From IMG/VR virus record IMGVR_UViG_3300033997_000243, positions 1 through 64,000 of that record: 64,000 nt of DNA; one strand, 5' to 3'. Below are positions 2,143 through 32,363 of the stretch, one piece after another. The notes under the pieces were generated by a model. It did not search any database, had not been told where the DNA came from, and worked only from the letters and a program-made list of their open reading frames with translations. Each line of letters begins with the position of its first letter. Within the stretch, counting starts at the first letter, position 1. Position numbers and translations under genes: made by a program.

Positions 2143-2868
2143 GTGCAGACAAAAACTCTGCACCTTTTATCAACGGAATATAACAAAATGAAAGTTCATA
2201 ACACAATAAACCCGTCCGACTACGACAAAAACTCCGAACTAAGATCAAAAGTTTGGACTGAATACACTGAAGGTCATCAAGTAATAGGTATTGATCTCGA
2301 TGAATCTATTCTGGCTACCGTAGAAGTTCTTCTTAACATGGTCAATGAAAGATGCGGAACAAAATACACGTTGTCTGATGTAGTTCGCTATGATATGGTT
2401 GAAACTCTTGGCCTCGATCTTCAAATGTTTTTGGATATTCTACATAACTCTAACTATTTGAGTATGACAAAACCATTTGAACATACAAAAGAATTCATAC
2501 GCAAATTGCGTGATGGAGAATTAAACGAGCAATTCAATTTACGTAATGACCAACCTGTTTACCTTGCATTTATTACACACAGAGGATTCCGCTCTGACGG
2601 CTTTAAACTAACTCACGATGTTTTAGTTGAGAGCGGTTTAATTCCAGATATGTTAATTGTTTGTCCTGTAGGGCATTCAAAGTTGGATATTCTCGATGAT
2701 TTATTTGGCGATAACGTACAACTGATTATAGAAGATCAGCCTAAGATCTTAAATGATTTTACTCAGGCTGGTATTCAAACTGTTAAAAATCTGCGACCTT
2801 GGAATAAAGATCATTGGACAGACTATACAATTGATCTTACTTGCAGTCCTGATCCAATATTTGCTTAA
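2143..2868 (+). CDS. HAD-superfamily 5'(3')-deoxyribonucleotidase-like protein
   Basis: IGIDLDES (DxD motif I), FITHR (motif II), K, IIEDQP (motif IV). True start may be ATG 2188. Confidence 0.75.
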   Translation: MQTKTLHLLSTEYNKMKVHNTINPSDYDKNSELRSKVWTEYTEGHQVIGIDLDESILATVEVLLNMVNERCGTKYTLSDVVRYDMVETLGLDLQMFLDILHNSNYLSMTKPFEHTKEFIRKLRDGELNEQFNLRNDQPVYLAFITHRGFRSDGFKLTHDVLVESGLIPDMLIVCPVGHSKLDILDDLFGDNVQLIIEDQPKILNDFTQAGIQTVKNLRPWNKDHWTDYTIDLTCSPDPIFA

Positions 2869-2913
2869 TTGATTTGAACGCATTTACTCGCATTTACAAA
2901 TCAAACTTTTTAC

Positions 2914-3100
2914 TCGATTCAATGTTAAAAATCAACAGCACTATAATTTGTATTTAGATAGTTCGCTATCTTCCTGGTGGATTAAAGTCAATGGATTTGA
3001 CGCTGTTGATTTGAATCGAAAATGGAGTGAGTTTCCCCTTAACTCCTATTAGATTTACTGGCTGGTTACGATACGCTAATGTCGTGCCAGCCATTTTTTT
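2914..3100 (+). ncRNA. Candidate structured non-coding RNA
   Basis: Long stem (2914-2920/3013-3019 and 2929-2939/3002-3012) enclosing a UUCG hairpin (2956-2971) and a second hairpin (2987-3001), followed by a terminator. No ORF over about 10 aa on the + strand seen. Confidence 0.4.
3059..3100 (+). terminator. Rho-independent terminator
   Basis: TGGCTGG/CCAGCCA stem with an inner TACGATA/TGTCGTG stem, followed by T7. Confidence 0.8.
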
Positions 3101-3111
3101 GTCCTGTCAAT

Positions 3112-3120
3112 ACTGTAAAT
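3112..3120 (+). promoter_or_regulatory. ACTGTAAAT putative phage promoter element
   Basis: The same 9-mer recurs just upstream of gene starts at 6643, 10014 and 28199. Here it is 28 nt before the clamp loader ATG. Confidence 0.55.
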
Positions 3121-3148
3121 CCTAGTGTATAAACCTAGAGGATTTACC

Positions 3149-4303
3149 ATGTCTAAAAAACTTGTCAGTAAGAAACCCAAAACACTCGAAAGTTACAACC
3201 TTCCTGAAAAATACCGTCCAACAAAACTTTCTGATTATATTGGTCAAACTAGCGCTCAAAATACAATGAGTGGTTGGCTTGAGCGTAAACGCTTTCCCTC
3301 AACAATTTTAATCAGCGGTTTAACTGGTAGTGGAAAGACCACGCTTGCCAAAATGATAGCGCGTTACGTAAACTGTGAAAAGAATACAGCTTGCGGTAAA
3401 TGTGATGCTTGTAAATTCTCTGATGACCAAATTCCAGATTTAATTGAAATCAATGCTGGTGAAGCTGGTAACATAGATGACATTCGCAATCTGTTACAAC
3501 GCGCAAAACGTACACCCCGTTTTAACAAACAAATCATTTTGATTGACGAAGCCCATTTACTTAGTGATAAAGCTGAAAGCACTTTGCTGGTTCCACTAGA
3601 AAAGCCGAGCAAAAACTGCATCTGGATTTTATGTACTACTAATCCAGAAAAACTTAAGAACACAATTCGCAATCGCTGCACACACATAACGCTTAATCCA
3701 ATATCAGCCAAAGAAGTTTATGCTCGTTTAGAGATCATTGTGAGAGAAGAAGGTCTTAAGATTAAAGACAAAGACTTATTCAAAAAATGCCTTAAGCGTA
3801 TTGCCGAACTTTGTGAAGGCCAGATGCGTAATGCAATAAGTATGTTGGACACATTGATCAGCATTGTTTCAAGTGGTAACAAATATGATGAAAGTGTTGT
3901 CAGCGATCTTGGTATGCAAGCAACTGAAGAAGAATTGAATTCTGTTTCTGCTGAAATACTTGTTGCAGTTCTTGGTAACAATTTGTTGGGTATCGTTAAA
4001 AACTGCAAAGGTTGCAAAGAACCTCGTAAACTTATTTCACAACTGCGTTATCTTATTGACTGGCAAATTGAAAGTATTACTGGCATTGCAAAATATGTTC
4101 CAGCCATTGGTAAACTTTTTGTTTCGTCCGTTAATAAAAACAAGGTAAAAGTTTCGTTGCCCGCTTTGTTAAAAGTTCAATCTGTTTTACTTGATGTCGA
4201 TCACAAAATCTTAACGGTTCCGGCTTATCCTGCGGCTGTTGCACTTTATACTGCATTAGCTGATTTAAGTGTTGACGACTATTTTAACAAGGTGAAAAAA
4301 TGA
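3149..4303 (+). CDS. dnaX: Clamp loader AAA+ ATPase, DNA polymerase III gamma/tau-like
   Basis: PEKYRP, Walker A GLTGSGKTT, Zn module C...CGKCDAC, Walker B IDEAH and SRC-equivalent IRNRC. GAGG RBS before ATG 3149. Confidence 0.9.
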   Translation: MSKKLVSKKPKTLESYNLPEKYRPTKLSDYIGQTSAQNTMSGWLERKRFPSTILISGLTGSGKTTLAKMIARYVNCEKNTACGKCDACKFSDDQIPDLIEINAGEAGNIDDIRNLLQRAKRTPRFNKQIILIDEAHLLSDKAESTLLVPLEKPSKNCIWILCTTNPEKLKNTIRNRCTHITLNPISAKEVYARLEIIVREEGLKIKDKDLFKKCLKRIAELCEGQMRNAISMLDTLISIVSSGNKYDESVVSDLGMQATEEELNSVSAEILVAVLGNNLLGIVKNCKGCKEPRKLISQLRYLIDWQIESITGIAKYVPAIGKLFVSSVNKNKVKVSLPALLKVQSVLLDVDHKILTVPAYPAAVALYTALADLSVDDYFNKVKK

Positions 4304-30201: not shown

Positions 30202-31058
30202 AGATTGGGCTTCATGTAGGAAACTGCATGTCGAAAGCTACCTAAACGGGGAAGAGTCCTGTGTAGAGAATACATGGGAAGAACCCCGTAGCAAAGAATG
30301 TTATACGTGATATAGTCTTAACCAGAGGAGTAAGATTATGTTACTGACCGCGACTAAATTTCATGGTATTTTTATAAATAAAAGGACAAAGAAGGTATAC
30401 TCTAAACGATCTGGAAGTTTAAAAGAGTTAAAGCAATCCCATGTCTATGATAAAAGGAAGAGAAAACCTAAACCATATATTCAGGTTGGCGTTCCAGAAT
30501 GTACCCTTCTTCATAGAATTATCGCCTATACTTTTATCGGAAATGCTGATGGTTTGACTGTTAATCATAAAAACGGCAATACATTAGATAACCGAATCAA
30601 AAATTTAGAGATAGTGACCCTTGAGCAAAATCTTTTGCATGCAAAAGAAACCGGTTTACTATCGAAAGGCGAAAGTCACGGGAGATCTTTATACAAAGAC
30701 TCTTTATTACTAAAAGCATTGAAGAGAATATCTTCTGGTTTTTCTGTCAAAAGCACCGCTGAAAAATATAAAGTAAGCCAAAGTTATTTAAACAAAGTTA
30801 AAAACGGCGTTTACAGACGAGACTTATTAAATCGCGTATAACAGGAAAAGCTCTAACGACTATCGCTGAAATGCGAGTAGGGTGATAAGCAAATGATCAC
30901 TCCAAACGGTAGCGGCCTACGTTTATTGAAAAATAAATATGGCCTTGATATAGTCTCAACTTCCATTTGTAAAGAATGGAGCGATGTGTAAGACGAGGAT
31001 TGCTGAAACTCGCATCATCGGGATATGTTTTGCGAACATATCTTAAGAAAGAATAAAG
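30202..31058 (+). mobile_element. Self-splicing group I intron (IA2-like, 857 nt)
   Basis: Exon ends in U (30201) and intron ends in G (31058). IGS AGAUUGGG pairs with ligated exons CCU|AAUCU. P2 has a GAAA loop; P3 GCTACC/GGTAGC; P7 GACTA (30858)/TAGTC (30951); P7.1, P7.2, P8 and P9 stems visible. Splicing restores PNLQ in frame. Confidence 0.93.
30338..30841 (+). CDS. Intron-encoded HNH homing endonuclease (I-HmuI-like HNH core)
   Basis: LHRIIA.TF...VNHKNG...DN...NLE.VT..QN..HA with a C-terminal HTH-like segment; GAGGAG RBS; lies in the P6a loop. Confidence 0.9.
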   Translation: MLLTATKFHGIFINKRTKKVYSKRSGSLKELKQSHVYDKRKRKPKPYIQVGVPECTLLHRIIAYTFIGNADGLTVNHKNGNTLDNRIKNLEIVTLEQNLLHAKETGLLSKGESHGRSLYKDSLLLKALKRISSGFSVKSTAEKYKVSQSYLNKVKNGVYRRDLLNRV

Positions 31059-32363
31059 AATCTCCAGCAAGTACCTAGCCGTGATGAATTAGGCTACCAT
31101 ATTAAACGTCTGCTTATTTCTCAACCTGGAACATTATTGATCAAGGTTGACTACTCGGCTCACGAAGTACGTGGTTGGTCTATTATTAGTGGCGATAAAA
31201 ATGTTGCTGATGTTTTCCAAGTTGGTGCTGATTTACGTAATCGCTATAAGTTTGTTCCAGATCCTTGGATTGCTCACCGAATAGAAATTGAAGGTGACGT
31301 TCACCGTATCAACGCTAGTTACTTCTTTGGACTTCCAATCCATGAAGTAAGTAAGCCTATTCGTAACGCAGTAAAAACAGTTATCTTCGGTTTGATTTAT
31401 CAACAAGGTGATGATGGTTTATCCTTATCTACTGGTCAGACTGTTGAGAAAATTCGTGAACTTAAAGCGAAGTTTCTTGAAAGATTCCCTGTTGGTTACG
31501 GTTGGTTTGATACCTGTAAGAAAGATGCGGTTGACAATTTGTTTGTTGAAAGTCCTGTTGGTCGTCGTCGTACATTATGGCCACTGATGTTCAAGAAACT
31601 TGTTGATCGTCAAACTGATTACAGAAGCAAGGACAAACATTTAAACAGTATTATCAATCGTTGTTTACGTCAAGCGGTTAACAGTCCAGTTCAAGGTTTT
31701 GGTAGTGACCTTATGATGTTGGCAATACGTTTGATTGATAAATACAAATATCAACATTTCTTGGACACTGGTAAATATCCATTAATGAACCTTAATGTTT
31801 CCGTACACGACAGTTTAACTGTTGAAGTTGGTTACGAGTGGTTCTGGTTAGCAGTTAAATTTATCGAACGTGCTATGACTACTGGAGCTAAAACTCTGGT
31901 AGAAGAAAAGTTTGATTATAAATTTACTAGCGCACCTGAAATGGATTTTGATATTGGTGGAAACGAGCGGGATGTTAAGGCGTGGAACTTTAGTTTCTTA
32001 AGTATGGAAGCTTTAGTTCGTAAGAGTCTTGAGTTCCAAAGTAAAGAATTGGGCCACAAAGTAAACATTGATAAAGTTGTAGATACTATCATGCAAGATC
32101 AGTATGCTGATATGCCTGAGTGGTTACAAAAACAATTGTGGGCTAATAACATCAAAATCAGAAGTATGCCAAAGAAAAATCCTTTGACTAAAGAGGAAAT
32201 CAAATTGGCTGCTGTTTACGCAAAAGAAACTCGTAGTAACAAAGTTTTACTTGACAAGGCGATTGCTGAAATTGAAGCAAGCAAGAAAAAAGCTGCTAAA
32301 ACAGAATCAACTAGAAGTGAGACAGTTGCTGCGGCCAAGAAGAAACTTAAGGAAGCGGCCTAA
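31059..32363 (+). CDS. polA: Family A DNA polymerase, exon 2 (polymerase domain)
   Basis: NLQQVP, motif A DYSAHEVR, motif B RNAVKTVIFGLIY (Phe at the E. coli 762 position), NSPVQG and motif C VHDS. Confidence 0.92.
   Translation, partial: NLQQVPSRDELGYHIKRLLISQPGTLLIKVDYSAHEVRGWSIISGDKNVADVFQVGADLRNRYKFVPDPWIAHRIEIEGDVHRINASYFFGLPIHEVSKPIRNAVKTVIFGLIYQQGDDGLSLSTGQTVEKIRELKAKFLERFPVGYGWFDTCKKDAVDNLFVESPVGRRRTLWPLMFKKLVDRQTDYRSKDKHLNSIINRCLRQAVNSPVQGFGSDLMMLAIRLIDKYKYQHFLDTGKYPLMNLNVSVHDSLTVEVGYEWFWLAVKFIERAMTTGAKTLVEEKFDYKFTSAPEMDFDIGGNERDVKAWNFSFLSMEALVRKSLEFQSKELGHKVNIDKVVDTIMQDQYADMPEWLQKQLWANNIKIRSMPKKNPLTKEEIKLAAVYAKETRSNKVLLDKAIAEIEASKKKAAKTESTRSETVAAAKKKLKEAA

What the first reader, a model, noticed from the sequence alone, without database searches (positions are those of the whole stretch)
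2914..3100. Candidate multibranch structured ncRNA in the largest internal intergenic gap
Seen: TCGATTC (2914-2920) pairs with GAATCGA (3013-3019) and AAATCAACAGC (2929-2939) with GCTGTTGATTT (3002-3012). They close a junction holding AGATAG-TTCG-CTATCT (2956-2971, UUCG tetraloop) and GTCAA-TGGAT-TTGAC (2987-3001). A GGAGT...ACTCC hairpin (3024-3046) and a strong terminator follow. About 280 non-coding nt is unusual in this densely packed window. It is not tRNA-like. Inference: a phage small RNA or structured 3' UTR. A TATAATTT at 2942 could start a shorter isoform lacking the 5' stem arm and folding differently.
Basis: partly seen in the sequence, partly recalled or inferred. Interest (0 to 1): 0.6.

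Follow-up and report, generated by a model that had tools for sequence, protein, structure and literature searches.

The report
Conserved jumbo-phage small RNA gene
The 280-base gap in front of the clamp-loader gene of this uncultivated 320-kb phage most likely holds a roughly 145-nt small regulatory RNA gene that at least nine related phage lineages keep, and in some of them the end of the upstream message can fold back over it; it is a new RNA family of a familiar kind, with no expression data yet.

Summary
The region folds far better than shuffles (z -5.95 with the terminator, -5.10 without it).

The gap (2869-3148) lies between a 241-aa ORF and the clamp loader of a 319.5-kb jumbo phage distantly related to Pseudomonas phage Lu11. 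Fourteen related metagenomic loci (clamp loader 48-62% identical) keep a 207-281-nt gap with the same layout:
- an invariant TAATTT, which looks like a -10 promoter element;
- a 5' hairpin that starts 4-10 nt after it;
- a body with a UUCCC-type hairpin loop, and often a GGA loop;
- an AU-rich stretch, then an intrinsic terminator about 155 nt downstream;
- the phage's ACTGTAAAT promoter for the clamp loader.

The gap is more conserved than synonymous sites in the flanking genes. A covariance model built from one clade finds the window at E 1.6e-7. Rfam and ARAGORN find nothing.

It recurs with changed sequence in three lineages (-22 to -27 kcal/mol), and in four of the six loci only on the + strand.

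Best reading: an autonomous sRNA gene sitting in the 3' region of the upstream message, with a second, masked or processed form on read-through transcripts. No RNA data could be obtained.

The parts
2869..2910 (+). AT-rich hairpin directly after the stop codon (TTGATTTG 2869-2876 / CAAATCAA 2897-2904), followed by ACTTTTT. It encloses a direct repeat of CGCATTTAC (2879-2887 and 2889-2897). It may be a weak terminator or a protein-binding site; its role is open.
   Evidence: Sequence; MFE fold of the whole gap.
2914..2939 (+). 5' arm of the long closing stem P1: P1a TCGATTC 2914-2920, an 8-nt bulge 2921-2928, and P1b AAATCAACAGC 2929-2939. It lies upstream of the -10-like element, so it is present only in transcripts that read through from the upstream ORF.
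   Evidence: Duplex energy is -23.4 kcal/mol and 0 of 34 natural control windows reach it.
2942..2949 (+). TATAATTT. The TAATTT at 2944-2949 is invariant in all 14 related loci. I read it as a -10 element without a conserved -35; the inferred start is near 2955-2957. RNase E site is the alternative reading.
   Evidence: TAATTT also peaks 30-39 nt upstream of start codons elsewhere in this genome. L016 has a canonical terminator just upstream of its TAATTT.
2956..2971 (+). P2, the 5' hairpin AGATAG-TTCG-CTATCT. A purine-rich 5' hairpin of the AGAG.../...CUCU type stands at this position in most relatives. In the window it competes with a 10-bp alternative hairpin (2959-2968 / 2975-2984).
2970..2986 (+). 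Junction CUUCCUGGUGGAUUAAA. It carries a pyrimidine-rich anti-Shine-Dalgarno-like CUUCC and the conserved CUGGU(A/G)G motif.
   Evidence: covariance-model consensus.
2987..3001 (+). P3 hairpin GTCAA-TGGAT-TTGAC with GGA in its loop. An A-N-GGA loop recurs in the hairpins read from the sequences (L011, L013, L015, L005, L018, L019, L021, L004). Single-sequence MFE folds place GGA in a loop only in L011, L013 and L015.
   Evidence: (two compensatory pairs inside the L011 clade).
3002..3019 (+). 3' arm of P1 (GCTGTTGATTT + GAATCGA). Its core UUGAAUCG is conserved in sequence with the L011 clade (UUGUAUCG in L008 and L012). In a short transcript it has no long-range partner.
3024..3046 (+). P4 hairpin GGAGTGAG-TTTCCC-CTTAACTCC with a C-rich apical loop (mean unpaired probability 0.86). 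A UCCC or UUCC hairpin loop is found in 13 of 14 family members.
   Evidence: The loop is complementary to the G-rich Shine-Dalgarno variant (A)GGGGAA(A) found at 11-13 phage start sites.
3047..3058 (+). AU-rich single-stranded spacer UAUUAGAUUUAC directly before the terminator. Relatives have UUUUGAUUAG, GAUUUUUGAUAG and similar. This is the layout of the 3' module that binds Hfq in known sRNAs.
   Evidence: (conserved UG-UUUUGAU in the model consensus).
3059..3100 (+). Intrinsic terminator: bulged 14-bp G+C-rich stem 3059-3093 and T7 at 3094-3100. The minus strand has no T run after the stem.
   Evidence: A terminator stands at this position in all 14 loci, with T runs of 5-10.
3112..3120 (+). 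ACTGTAAAT, the phage's recurrent promoter motif, here serving the clamp-loader gene. It is not part of the RNA; it marks the RNA's downstream boundary.
   Evidence: About 40 copies lie upstream of genes in the genome. The core matches the 'putative middle/late promoter' annotated in phage Lu11. It is present in all 14 loci and in distant relatives that lack the gap.
3137..4303 (+). Shine-Dalgarno sequence AGAGGA (3137-3142) and the clamp-loader gene (ATG at 3149). This is the downstream neighbour, given for context.
   Evidence: phrog_5846 E 1.3e-79; PF13177.

Best explanation
The gap holds a single-copy gene for a base-pairing small RNA of about 145 nt, roughly 2955 to 3100 on the + strand. 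Each step below is marked as shown or inferred.

1. Transcription. It starts about 7 nt after the invariant -10-like TAATTT and ends at the intrinsic terminator. This is inferred from conservation, not from RNA data.

2. Shape of the RNA. It begins with a 5' hairpin. It displays pyrimidine-rich motifs (CUUCC in the junction, UUUCCC in the apical loop of P4) and a GGA hairpin loop. It ends in an AU-rich stretch, a terminator and a U tail, which is the layout that binds Hfq in Gammaproteobacteria, the probable host group.

3. Probable action (inferred). It pairs with G-rich ribosome-binding sites of host or phage messages and changes their translation or stability.

4. Position. The gene sits in the 3' region of the upstream message, at the border between that transcription unit and the ACTGTAAAT-driven replication module.

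5. The closing stem P1. In the window's lineage and two others, transcripts reading through from the upstream ORF also carry a 5' arm. The pairing itself is shown by recurrence and strand asymmetry.

6. Role of P1 (inferred, undecided). The embedded copy is either masked or cut out, and a stem of this length is long enough for RNase III. Equally, the free sRNA could pair in trans with the 3' end of the upstream message.
For: **Conserved layout**
- Fourteen loci keep the order peptidase, ~220-aa ORF, gap, clamp loader, with gaps of 207-281 nt.
- All 14 have TAATTT. The distance from TAATTT to the end of the terminator T run is 121-214 nt, and 152-170 nt in eleven of them.
- The first base pair lies 4-10 nt after TAATTT in every locus.

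**Selection on the gap**
- Gap identity is 65-83%, against 33-69% at roughly four-fold third codon positions of both flanking genes, in six pairs.
- Indels in the gap are 1-2 nt, which argues against coding.

**Homology between clades**
- Model R1, built only from L011, L013 and L015, finds the window at 38 bits (E 1.6e-7), L018 (E 1.2e-8) and L005 (E 2e-5).
- Model R2 adds L012 (E 0.0016), L019 (E 0.004) and L008 (E 0.056). All hits lie in the syntenic gap on the + strand.

**Pairing**
- On the model-guided alignment, 92.8% of cells pair and 26 of 52 pairs change on both sides. No shuffle of 500 reaches this, and slid controls pair at 26-46%.
- On a plain MAFFT alignment of one clade, P1 keeps pairing through C-G/U-G and G-C/G-U changes, and P3 has two compensatory pairs.

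**P1**
- Duplex energy is -22.5 to -26.8 kcal/mol in the window, L011, L013, L015, L008 and L012, with different sequences. Natural control windows reach this 0-1 times out of 13-34.
- In L011, L013, L015 and L008 the minus-strand version is only -10.6 to -13.0 kcal/mol.
- Long forms fold at z -5.1, -6.2, -4.1, -2.9 and -2.5.

**Autonomy**
- L016 has a canonical terminator between the upstream ORF and TAATTT.

**Loops and host**
- C-rich hairpin loops occur in 13 of 14 members.
- The phage GroEL is 70-71% identical to Rheinheimera and Alishewanella GroEL, and the nearest cultured phages infect Pseudomonas, Yersinia and Erwinia.
Against:
- No conserved -35 element lies upstream of TAATTT, and the sigma-70 consensus scan does not call a promoter there.
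- Across clades, sequence-only alignment recovers little beyond the terminator. The cross-clade covariation therefore rests on an alignment fitted to the structure.
- Five lineages (L004, L016, L017, L020, L021) are joined to the family only by layout, not by a significant model score.
- P1 is not detectable in about half of the lineages.
- The short body alone is only mildly more stable than shuffles, with z from +0.14 to -3.8.
- The best phage target, an 11-nt match to the groEL ribosome-binding site, is not significant (P 0.27).
- The host, and therefore the presence of Hfq, is inferred.
Confidence: 0.62

Rival explanations
1. There is no internal promoter. The element is a structured 3' UTR of the upstream ORF's message, and the functional form is the long multibranch fold closed by P1. 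TAATTT is then an RNA feature, for example an RNase E site (AA|UUU fits the known R-N|W-U-U preference) that releases a processed 3'-UTR-derived RNA.
For: - The window has no strong terminator between the ORF and the element.
- P1 is conserved and strand-specific, and its 5' arm lies inside the ORF in L012.
- In the L011 clade, only the long form is more stable than shuffles.
- No conserved -35 is present.
Against: - L016 carries a canonical terminator upstream of TAATTT, which would block read-through.
- About half of the lineages lack a detectable P1 yet keep TAATTT, the hairpin spacing and the body.
- TAATTT also sits 30-39 nt upstream of many start codons in this genome, as a -10 element would.
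Confidence: 0.2
2. The element is a cis-acting leader: a riboswitch-like or protein-dependent attenuator. The multibranch fold would be the sensor, and the terminator at 3059-3100 would decide whether upstream transcription runs into the clamp-loader and replication genes.
For: - A structured domain followed by a terminator directly upstream of a gene is the usual attenuator layout.
- The arrangement is conserved in 14 loci.
- In the L011 and L008 clades, the 3' arm of P1 overlaps the next hairpin, so alternative folds exist.
Against: - The phage's own ACTGTAAAT promoter lies between the terminator and the gene in every locus, so the clamp loader does not depend on read-through.
- I found no sequence that could pair with a terminator arm as an antiterminator when inspecting.
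- No Rfam riboswitch or leader matches, even at E 10.
- The body sequence diverges quickly between clades, unlike ligand-binding cores.
Confidence: 0.07
3. It is a DNA-level element: an inverted repeat flanking a promoter, serving as an operator pair, a recombination site or an origin-related site.
For: - In the window the two arms are perfect Watson-Crick complements and fold equally well on both strands.
- A CGCATTTAC direct repeat lies just upstream.
Against: - In L011, L013, L015 and L008 the stem holds 3-6 G-U pairs. It is worth -22 to -27 kcal/mol on the + strand but only -10.6 to -13 on the minus strand, which fits RNA and not duplex-DNA symmetry.
- The arm sequences differ completely between lineages, so no common protein-binding site exists.
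Confidence: 0.03
4. It is a chance fold in a neutral spacer that merely separates a terminator from the next promoter.
For: AT-rich spacers with a terminator and a promoter are common. The body alone reaches only z -2.5.
Against: - The gap is more conserved than synonymous sites in six pairs.
- The covariance-model hits are significant.
- TAATTT and its spacing are invariant.
- The wider phage group manages without any spacer here.
Confidence: 0.02

Closest known systems
sRNAs nested at the 3' end of a gene with their own promoter and a terminator shared with the upstream message (the DapZ and MicL type in enterobacteria; from my own knowledge)
   Same: A -10-like element sits at or just after the end of an ORF. 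In the window one terminator serves both the sRNA and the upstream message. The 3' end has the Hfq-type layout, and short unpaired seed-like motifs are present.
   Different: This one is phage-encoded and shares no sequence with them. Some lineages add a 21-25-bp fold-back between the end of the upstream message and the middle of the sRNA. The promoter is not shown experimentally.
sRNAs of virulent and jumbo phages (four ncRNAs reported for PA5oct, PMC7318152; one candidate in phiKZ not confirmed by Northern blot, PMC8244752; review PMC12197685)
   Same: [quoted passage not shown]
   Different: The phage group differs (distant Lu11/PaBG relatives), and cultured relatives lack the gene. It is defined here by comparison of 14 loci rather than by RNA-seq.
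Long-range RNase III processing stalks (stems flanking 16S and 23S rRNA, phage T7 R sites) and lambda sib retroregulation (from my own knowledge)
   Same: The duplex is about two helical turns long and is formed by sequences far apart. It exists only in the longer, read-through transcript, as with sib.
   Different: Cleavage is untested. The stem carries a one-sided 4-8-nt bulge and encloses a putative promoter and part of an sRNA.
C-rich-loop sRNAs that pair with G-rich Shine-Dalgarno sequences (RsaE and RoxS in Firmicutes; from my own knowledge)
   Same: UCCC or UUCCC motifs are exposed in hairpin loops in 13 of 14 members. They are complementary to the GGGGAA-type ribosome-binding sites used by 11-13 genes of this phage.
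   Different: There is no Rfam match to RsaE or any other family. The probable host is a gammaproteobacterium. No target is established.
CsrA/RsmA-titrating RNAs (CsrB, RsmY, RsmZ)
   Same: A hairpin with A-N-GGA in its loop (P3) recurs in the hairpins read from the sequences of eight lineages.
   Different: Only one to three GGA motifs are present, against many in the sponge RNAs. There is no match to those Rfam families.

Membership tests
Any curated Rfam 15 family (4227 models) | Score at or above the family's gathering threshold | tested here: not met
   No hit reached gathering score anywhere in the window. With E up to 10 on 2700-3300, only four chance-level snoRNA or sRNA hits appeared, at 15-20 bits against thresholds of 43-100.
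tRNA / tmRNA | Cloverleaf or tmRNA fold recognised by ARAGORN | tested here: not met
   No genes found in the window.
Hfq-type base-pairing sRNA (3' module) | Rho-independent terminator ending in a U tail of about 6 or more | tested here: met
   The window has a 14-bp stem and T7. Across the 14 loci, T runs are 5-10.
Hfq-type base-pairing sRNA (3' module) | A/U-rich single-stranded stretch directly upstream of the terminator hairpin | tested here: met
   UAUUAGAUUUAC at 3047-3058. The model consensus has a conserved UG-UUUUGAU.
Hfq-type base-pairing sRNA (3' module) | Physical binding to Hfq and dependence on Hfq | not testable with these tools
   The host is uncultured and inferred to be a gammaproteobacterium only from GroEL similarity and cultured relatives.
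3'-nested sRNA with its own promoter (DapZ/MicL type) | A promoter inside or just after the upstream ORF that gives a primary 5' end | tested here: inconclusive
   TAATTT is invariant and the spacing to the hairpin is fixed in 14 of 14 loci, and L016 has a terminator upstream of it. Against this, there is no conserved -35, no consensus-scan hit and no RNA data.
3'-nested sRNA with its own promoter (DapZ/MicL type) | Terminator shared with the upstream message | tested here: inconclusive
   The window has no strong terminator between 2868 and 2942, which implies read-through. L016 does have one.
RNase III processing stalk | About 20 bp or more of double-stranded RNA formed by distant segments | tested here: met
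   21-25 bp including a one-sided bulge, at -22.5 to -26.8 kcal/mol, in six loci from three lineages.
RNase III processing stalk | Cleavage by RNase III | not testable with these tools
   Needs an enzyme assay or RNA ends mapped in wild-type and rnc-mutant hosts.
Riboswitch / transcription attenuator | A terminator that competes with an antiterminator and directly controls the downstream gene | tested here: not met
   A separate ACTGTAAAT promoter stands between the terminator and the gene in all loci. No antiterminator pairing was seen. No Rfam leader or riboswitch matched.
CsrB/RsmZ-type CsrA sponge | Many GGA motifs (typically five or more), mostly in hairpin loops | tested here: not met
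   One to three GGA motifs per member. Only the P3 loop motif recurs.
RsaE/RoxS-like C-rich sRNA | Unpaired UCCC motifs in loops | tested here: met
   Present in 13 of 14 members. The window has UUUCCC in the P4 loop, unpaired probability 0.86.
RsaE/RoxS-like C-rich sRNA | Homology to the RsaE family model | tested here: not met
   No Rfam match at E up to 10.

The most novel reading that the evidence does not exclude
The same RNA sequence is made in two states with different activity.

- From its own promoter it is a free regulator. Its central UUGAAUCG segment and C-rich loops are open, and it may control a set of G-rich ribosome-binding sites that includes the phage's own groEL.
- On read-through transcripts of the upstream gene, a co-evolving 5' arm clamps that central segment in a 21-25-bp stem. 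This would either silence the embedded copy or create an RNase III site that couples decay of the upstream message to release of the sRNA.

That would be a built-in switch at the border between early transcription and the replication genes of a jumbo phage.
Probability: 0.25. Interest if true: 0.7.

Novelty: new member of a known kind. Interest (0 to 1): 0.5.

Why it matters
Few sRNAs are known from virulent phages, and hardly any from jumbo phages. Those that are known come from RNA-seq of single cultured phages.

Here, comparison alone defines an RNA family that at least nine uncultivated jumbo-phage lineages share. It has a clear gene anatomy and a fixed place in front of the replication module. 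It also carries a co-evolving fold-back onto the neighbouring message, which predicts two RNA forms that can be tested.

The family could be added to Rfam-type libraries to improve phage annotation. It also gives a concrete candidate for studying how large lytic phages use RNA regulators.

In kind it is still an ordinary promoter-to-terminator sRNA gene, and no expression data exist yet.

Tried and rejected
**Searches that found nothing useful**
- Rfam at permissive and gathering thresholds: nothing.
- ARAGORN: nothing.
- blastn against GenBank phages: only short hits inside the clamp-loader gene.
- IMG/VR holds one other contig that is 100% identical over the region aligned (window 2700-3200), so it is useless for covariation.
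- The metagenome scan added little.
- PDB search of the upstream 241-aa ORF: no function found.
- Model search of the window for paralogues: none. DNA search of the whole genome: single copy.

**Tests that were uninformative or had to be redone**
- RNAduplex on full-length segments did not discriminate, because long interior loops are allowed (one search timed out). I replaced it with a contiguous-helix test and a compact-window test.
- MAFFT plus RNAalifold across clades recovers only the terminator and a partial P3. Cross-clade pair counts therefore rely on the model-fitted alignment.

**Ideas considered and rejected**
- *Small ORFs in the gap.* The 34, 42 and 32-aa frames and a 7-codon frame at 2991 are not kept in relatives, and indels are 1-2 nt.
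- *groEL as a target.* The 11-nt perfect match of the P4 loop to the groEL ribosome-binding site is not significant (P 0.27). It cannot be tested by covariation, because L005's and L004's genomes lack groEL.
- *CsrA sponge.* Too few GGA motifs.
- *Conserved -35 or MotA-box-like element upstream of TAATTT.* None found.

**Limit of the family**
More distant relatives (clamp loader at or below 45% identity, and Lu11 and NCTB) have no such gap.
Full report
**1. What is in the sequence**

The window is the first 64 kb of a 319,518-bp IMG/VR virus record with direct terminal repeats. The finding lies in a 280-nt gap, 2869-3148. Upstream is a 241-aa ORF of unknown function (2143-2868; phrog_16292 and phrog_420). 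Downstream is the clamp-loader gene (ATG at 3149; phrog_5846 E 1.3e-79, PF13177).

The stretch 2905-3102 folds at -61.2 kcal/mol against a shuffle mean of -37.4 (z -5.95). The minus strand scores almost the same (z -5.83), because the window's long stem has no G-U pairs. Without the terminator the long form still has z -5.10. The body alone (2954-3056) has z -2.52. Rfam gives nothing at gathering score, only chance-level hits at E up to 10, and ARAGORN finds no tRNA.

**2. The phage**

By protein search, the nearest cultured relatives of the clamp loader are Pseudomonas phage Lu11 (38%), phage NCTB, Yersinia phage fHe-Yen9-02, the Erwinia and Dickeya Yoloswag, Y3 and AD1 phages, and PaBG. This is the 'Lupandier' group, whose members encode their own sigma-70-like factor (PMC7412058).

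The genome also encodes GroES and GroEL. The GroEL is 70-71% identical to those of Rheinheimera, Alishewanella and Arsukibacterium. Strong Shine-Dalgarno sequences are used. I therefore infer an aquatic gammaproteobacterial host. This is not shown.

**3. Relatives keep the gap and its layout**

I fetched DNA around clamp-loader homologues of 48-62% identity. This gave 14 loci, counting the window, from at least nine distinct lineages. All have the order peptidase, ~220-aa ORF, gap of 207-281 nt, clamp loader.

Every gap has, in order:
- (i) TAATTT, preceded by TA in the window, L008 and L012, which gives TATAATTT;
- (ii) a hairpin whose first pair lies 4-10 nt after TAATTT;
- (iii) a body of about 100 nt;
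- (iv) an A/U-rich stretch and an intrinsic terminator with a T run of 5-10;
- (v) 14-35 nt further on, the motif (A)CTGTAAAT, then a Shine-Dalgarno sequence and the start codon.

The distance from TAATTT to the end of the T run is 121-214 nt, and 152-170 nt in eleven of the 14 loci.

ACTGTAAAT occurs about 40 times in the genome, mostly 25-45 nt upstream of start codons. Its core is the 'putative middle/late promoter' annotated in front of the Lu11 clamp loader. So the clamp loader has its own phage-type promoter downstream of the terminator.

Lu11, NCTB and more distant IMG/VR relatives (at or below 45% identity) have the promoter but no gap. The element is therefore an acquisition of one sub-clade.

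**4. Selection on the gap**

In six pairs of related loci, the gap is 65-83% identical. Roughly four-fold third codon positions of the two flanking genes are 33-69% identical. For example, L008 against L012 gives 71% against 39-41%, and L005 against L018 gives 77% against 42-48%. Indels in the gap are 1-2 nt, and the small frames in the window's gap are not kept in relatives. The constraint is therefore not on a protein.

**5. Homology and pairing**

A covariance model built only from L011, L013 and L015, with the helices P1-P4 and the terminator, finds the window at 2898-3100. The score is 38.1 bits, E 1.6e-7. It also finds L018 (E 1.2e-8) and L005 (E 2e-5).

A second model built from these six finds L012 (E 0.0016), L019 (E 0.004) and L008 (E 0.056) with filters off. 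Each hit lies in the syntenic gap on the + strand. L004, L016, L017, L020 and L021 do not score significantly, so they belong to the family by layout only.

On the model-guided alignment:
- 92.8% of cells pair;
- 26 of 52 pairs change on both sides;
- no shuffle of 500 reaches this;
- structures slid by 1-3 columns pair at only 26-46%.

That alignment is fitted to the structure, and a plain MAFFT alignment across clades recovers only the terminator and part of P3. Inside the L011 clade, where MAFFT is reliable, P1 is kept through C-G/U-G and G-C/G-U changes, and P3 has two compensatory pairs.

**6. The long closing stem (P1)**

Its 5' arm (2914-2939) lies upstream of TAATTT. It can therefore only be part of a transcript that starts further upstream. 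The 3' arm (3002-3019) lies between P3 and P4.

The same arrangement exists in L011, L013 and L015, and in L008 and L012, with quite different sequences. In L012 the 5' arm lies inside the end of the upstream ORF.

- Duplex energies are -22.5 to -26.8 kcal/mol over 21-25 bp.
- Equal-sized natural windows from the same loci reach these values 0-1 times out of 13-34.
- In L011, L013, L015 and L008 the stem holds 3-6 G-U pairs. It drops to -10.6 to -13.0 kcal/mol on the opposite strand. This points to + strand RNA rather than a DNA palindrome.
- With the 5' arm included, folds have z -5.1 (window), -6.2 (L008), -4.1 (L012), -2.9 (L011) and -2.5 (L015). The short bodies of the L011 clade score -0.8 to +0.1.
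- The core of the 3' arm, UUGAAUCG, is conserved in sequence between the window and the L011 clade (UUGUAUCG in L008 and L012), while the rest of the stem co-varies.
- In about half of the lineages no such stem is detectable. L017 may have a variant.

**7. Is it an independent gene?**

For:
- TAATTT is invariant and the spacing to the 5' hairpin is fixed.
- TAATTT fits the three key positions of a -10 hexamer (TAnnnT).
- The same hexamer peaks 30-39 nt upstream of start codons elsewhere in this genome.
- L016 has a canonical terminator (AGACCTGC-ATAATC-GCAGGTCT-TTTTT) between the upstream ORF and TAATTT.

Against:
- There is no conserved -35.
- The consensus scan gives no hit.
- There are no RNA data.

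The main rival is a 3' UTR processed at AA|UUU by RNase E.

**8. How it may work**

A UCCC or UUCC motif sits in a hairpin loop in 13 of 14 members. In the window this is UUUCCC in P4, with unpaired probability 0.86. A GGA loop (P3) recurs in the hairpins read from the sequences of eight lineages. The 3' end has the A/U-rich stretch plus terminator plus U tail that binds Hfq in known sRNAs.

The P4 loop is complementary to a G-rich Shine-Dalgarno variant, (A)GGGGAA. This variant occurs at 11-13 of about 398 start sites and accounts for 31% of all GGGGAA in the genome. One of these is an 11-nt perfect match to the groEL site, but a match of that length is expected by chance (P 0.27). It could not be tested by covariation, because the two complete relatives searched lack groEL.

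I therefore commit to a base-pairing sRNA that acts on G-rich ribosome-binding sites. Its targets are unknown.

For P1 I see three options that cannot be separated here:
- masking of the embedded copy in read-through messages;
- an RNase III site that links decay of the upstream message to release of the sRNA;
- pairing of the free sRNA with the 3' end of the upstream message in trans.

In the window, the short form is predicted to refold. The alternative fold is -26.2 kcal/mol, against -16.4 for P2+P3+P4, and it exposes UCUUCC and UUUCCC loops.

**9. Comparison and verdict**

The closest matches in kind are:
- 3'-nested sRNAs with their own promoter;
- the few sRNAs described in virulent and jumbo phages (PMC7318152, PMC8244752, PMC12197685);
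- long-range RNase III stalks and lambda sib retroregulation, for P1.

It belongs to no curated RNA family. It is a new family of a known kind. The gene is well supported by comparison, the promoter is moderately supported, and function is unsupported.

Noticed in passing
window 3112-3120; about 40 further copies in the genome (for example 589, 6643, 10014, 28199 on the + strand); L022:2407-2422: ACTGTAAAT is a recurrent promoter-like motif 25-45 nt upstream of start codons. Its core equals the 'putative middle/late promoter' annotated in Pseudomonas phage Lu11. It also precedes the clamp loader in distant relatives that lack the sRNA gap (L026, L031, L033).
   Followed up: partly
own genome 106241-108164, minus strand (outside the window; L024): The phage encodes GroES and GroEL. 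The GroEL is 70-71% identical to those of Rheinheimera, Alishewanella and Arsukibacterium, which hints at an aquatic gammaproteobacterial host. Two complete related phage genomes (those of L005 and L004) lack it.
   Followed up: partly
own genome, 11-13 start sites (for example 19159, 57967, 106241, 134186, 150827, 212910): A G-rich Shine-Dalgarno variant, (A)GGGGAA, is used by a subset of genes and accounts for 31% of all GGGGAA hexamers in the genome. It is complementary to the UUUCCCC loop of P4, so it is a possible regulon.
   Followed up: partly
window 2879-2887 and 2889-2897: CGCATTTAC is directly repeated one helical turn apart, inside the AT-rich hairpin 2869-2904 that follows the upstream stop codon. 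It could be a protein-binding site or a weak terminator.
   Followed up: no
window 30842-31136: This is a second stretch of about 295 nt with no ORF of 60 aa or more, if the next gene starts at the TTG at 31137. It shows no obvious TAATTT-hairpin-terminator layout.
   Followed up: no
own genome + strand 265441-265480: A 20-bp near-perfect complement (-26.8 kcal/mol, about 7 sd below the genome-wide mean) to the sRNA junction 2969-2990. It lies antisense to a minus-strand gene (264065-265708), so it would matter only if that strand is transcribed.
   Followed up: no
L016:2232-2262 and L004:2340-2443: L016 has a canonical terminator between the upstream ORF and the sRNA's TAATTT. L004 has a longer RNA (about 204 nt) that ends in two tandem terminator hairpins.
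   Followed up: partly
L011, L013, L015 (alignment A4 columns 140-147) and L008:2385-2400: In these clades the outer 3' arm of P1 overlaps the 5' arm of the next hairpin (P4, or AGACG...CGTCT). The long and short transcripts must therefore fold differently there. The window has no such overlap.
   Followed up: partly
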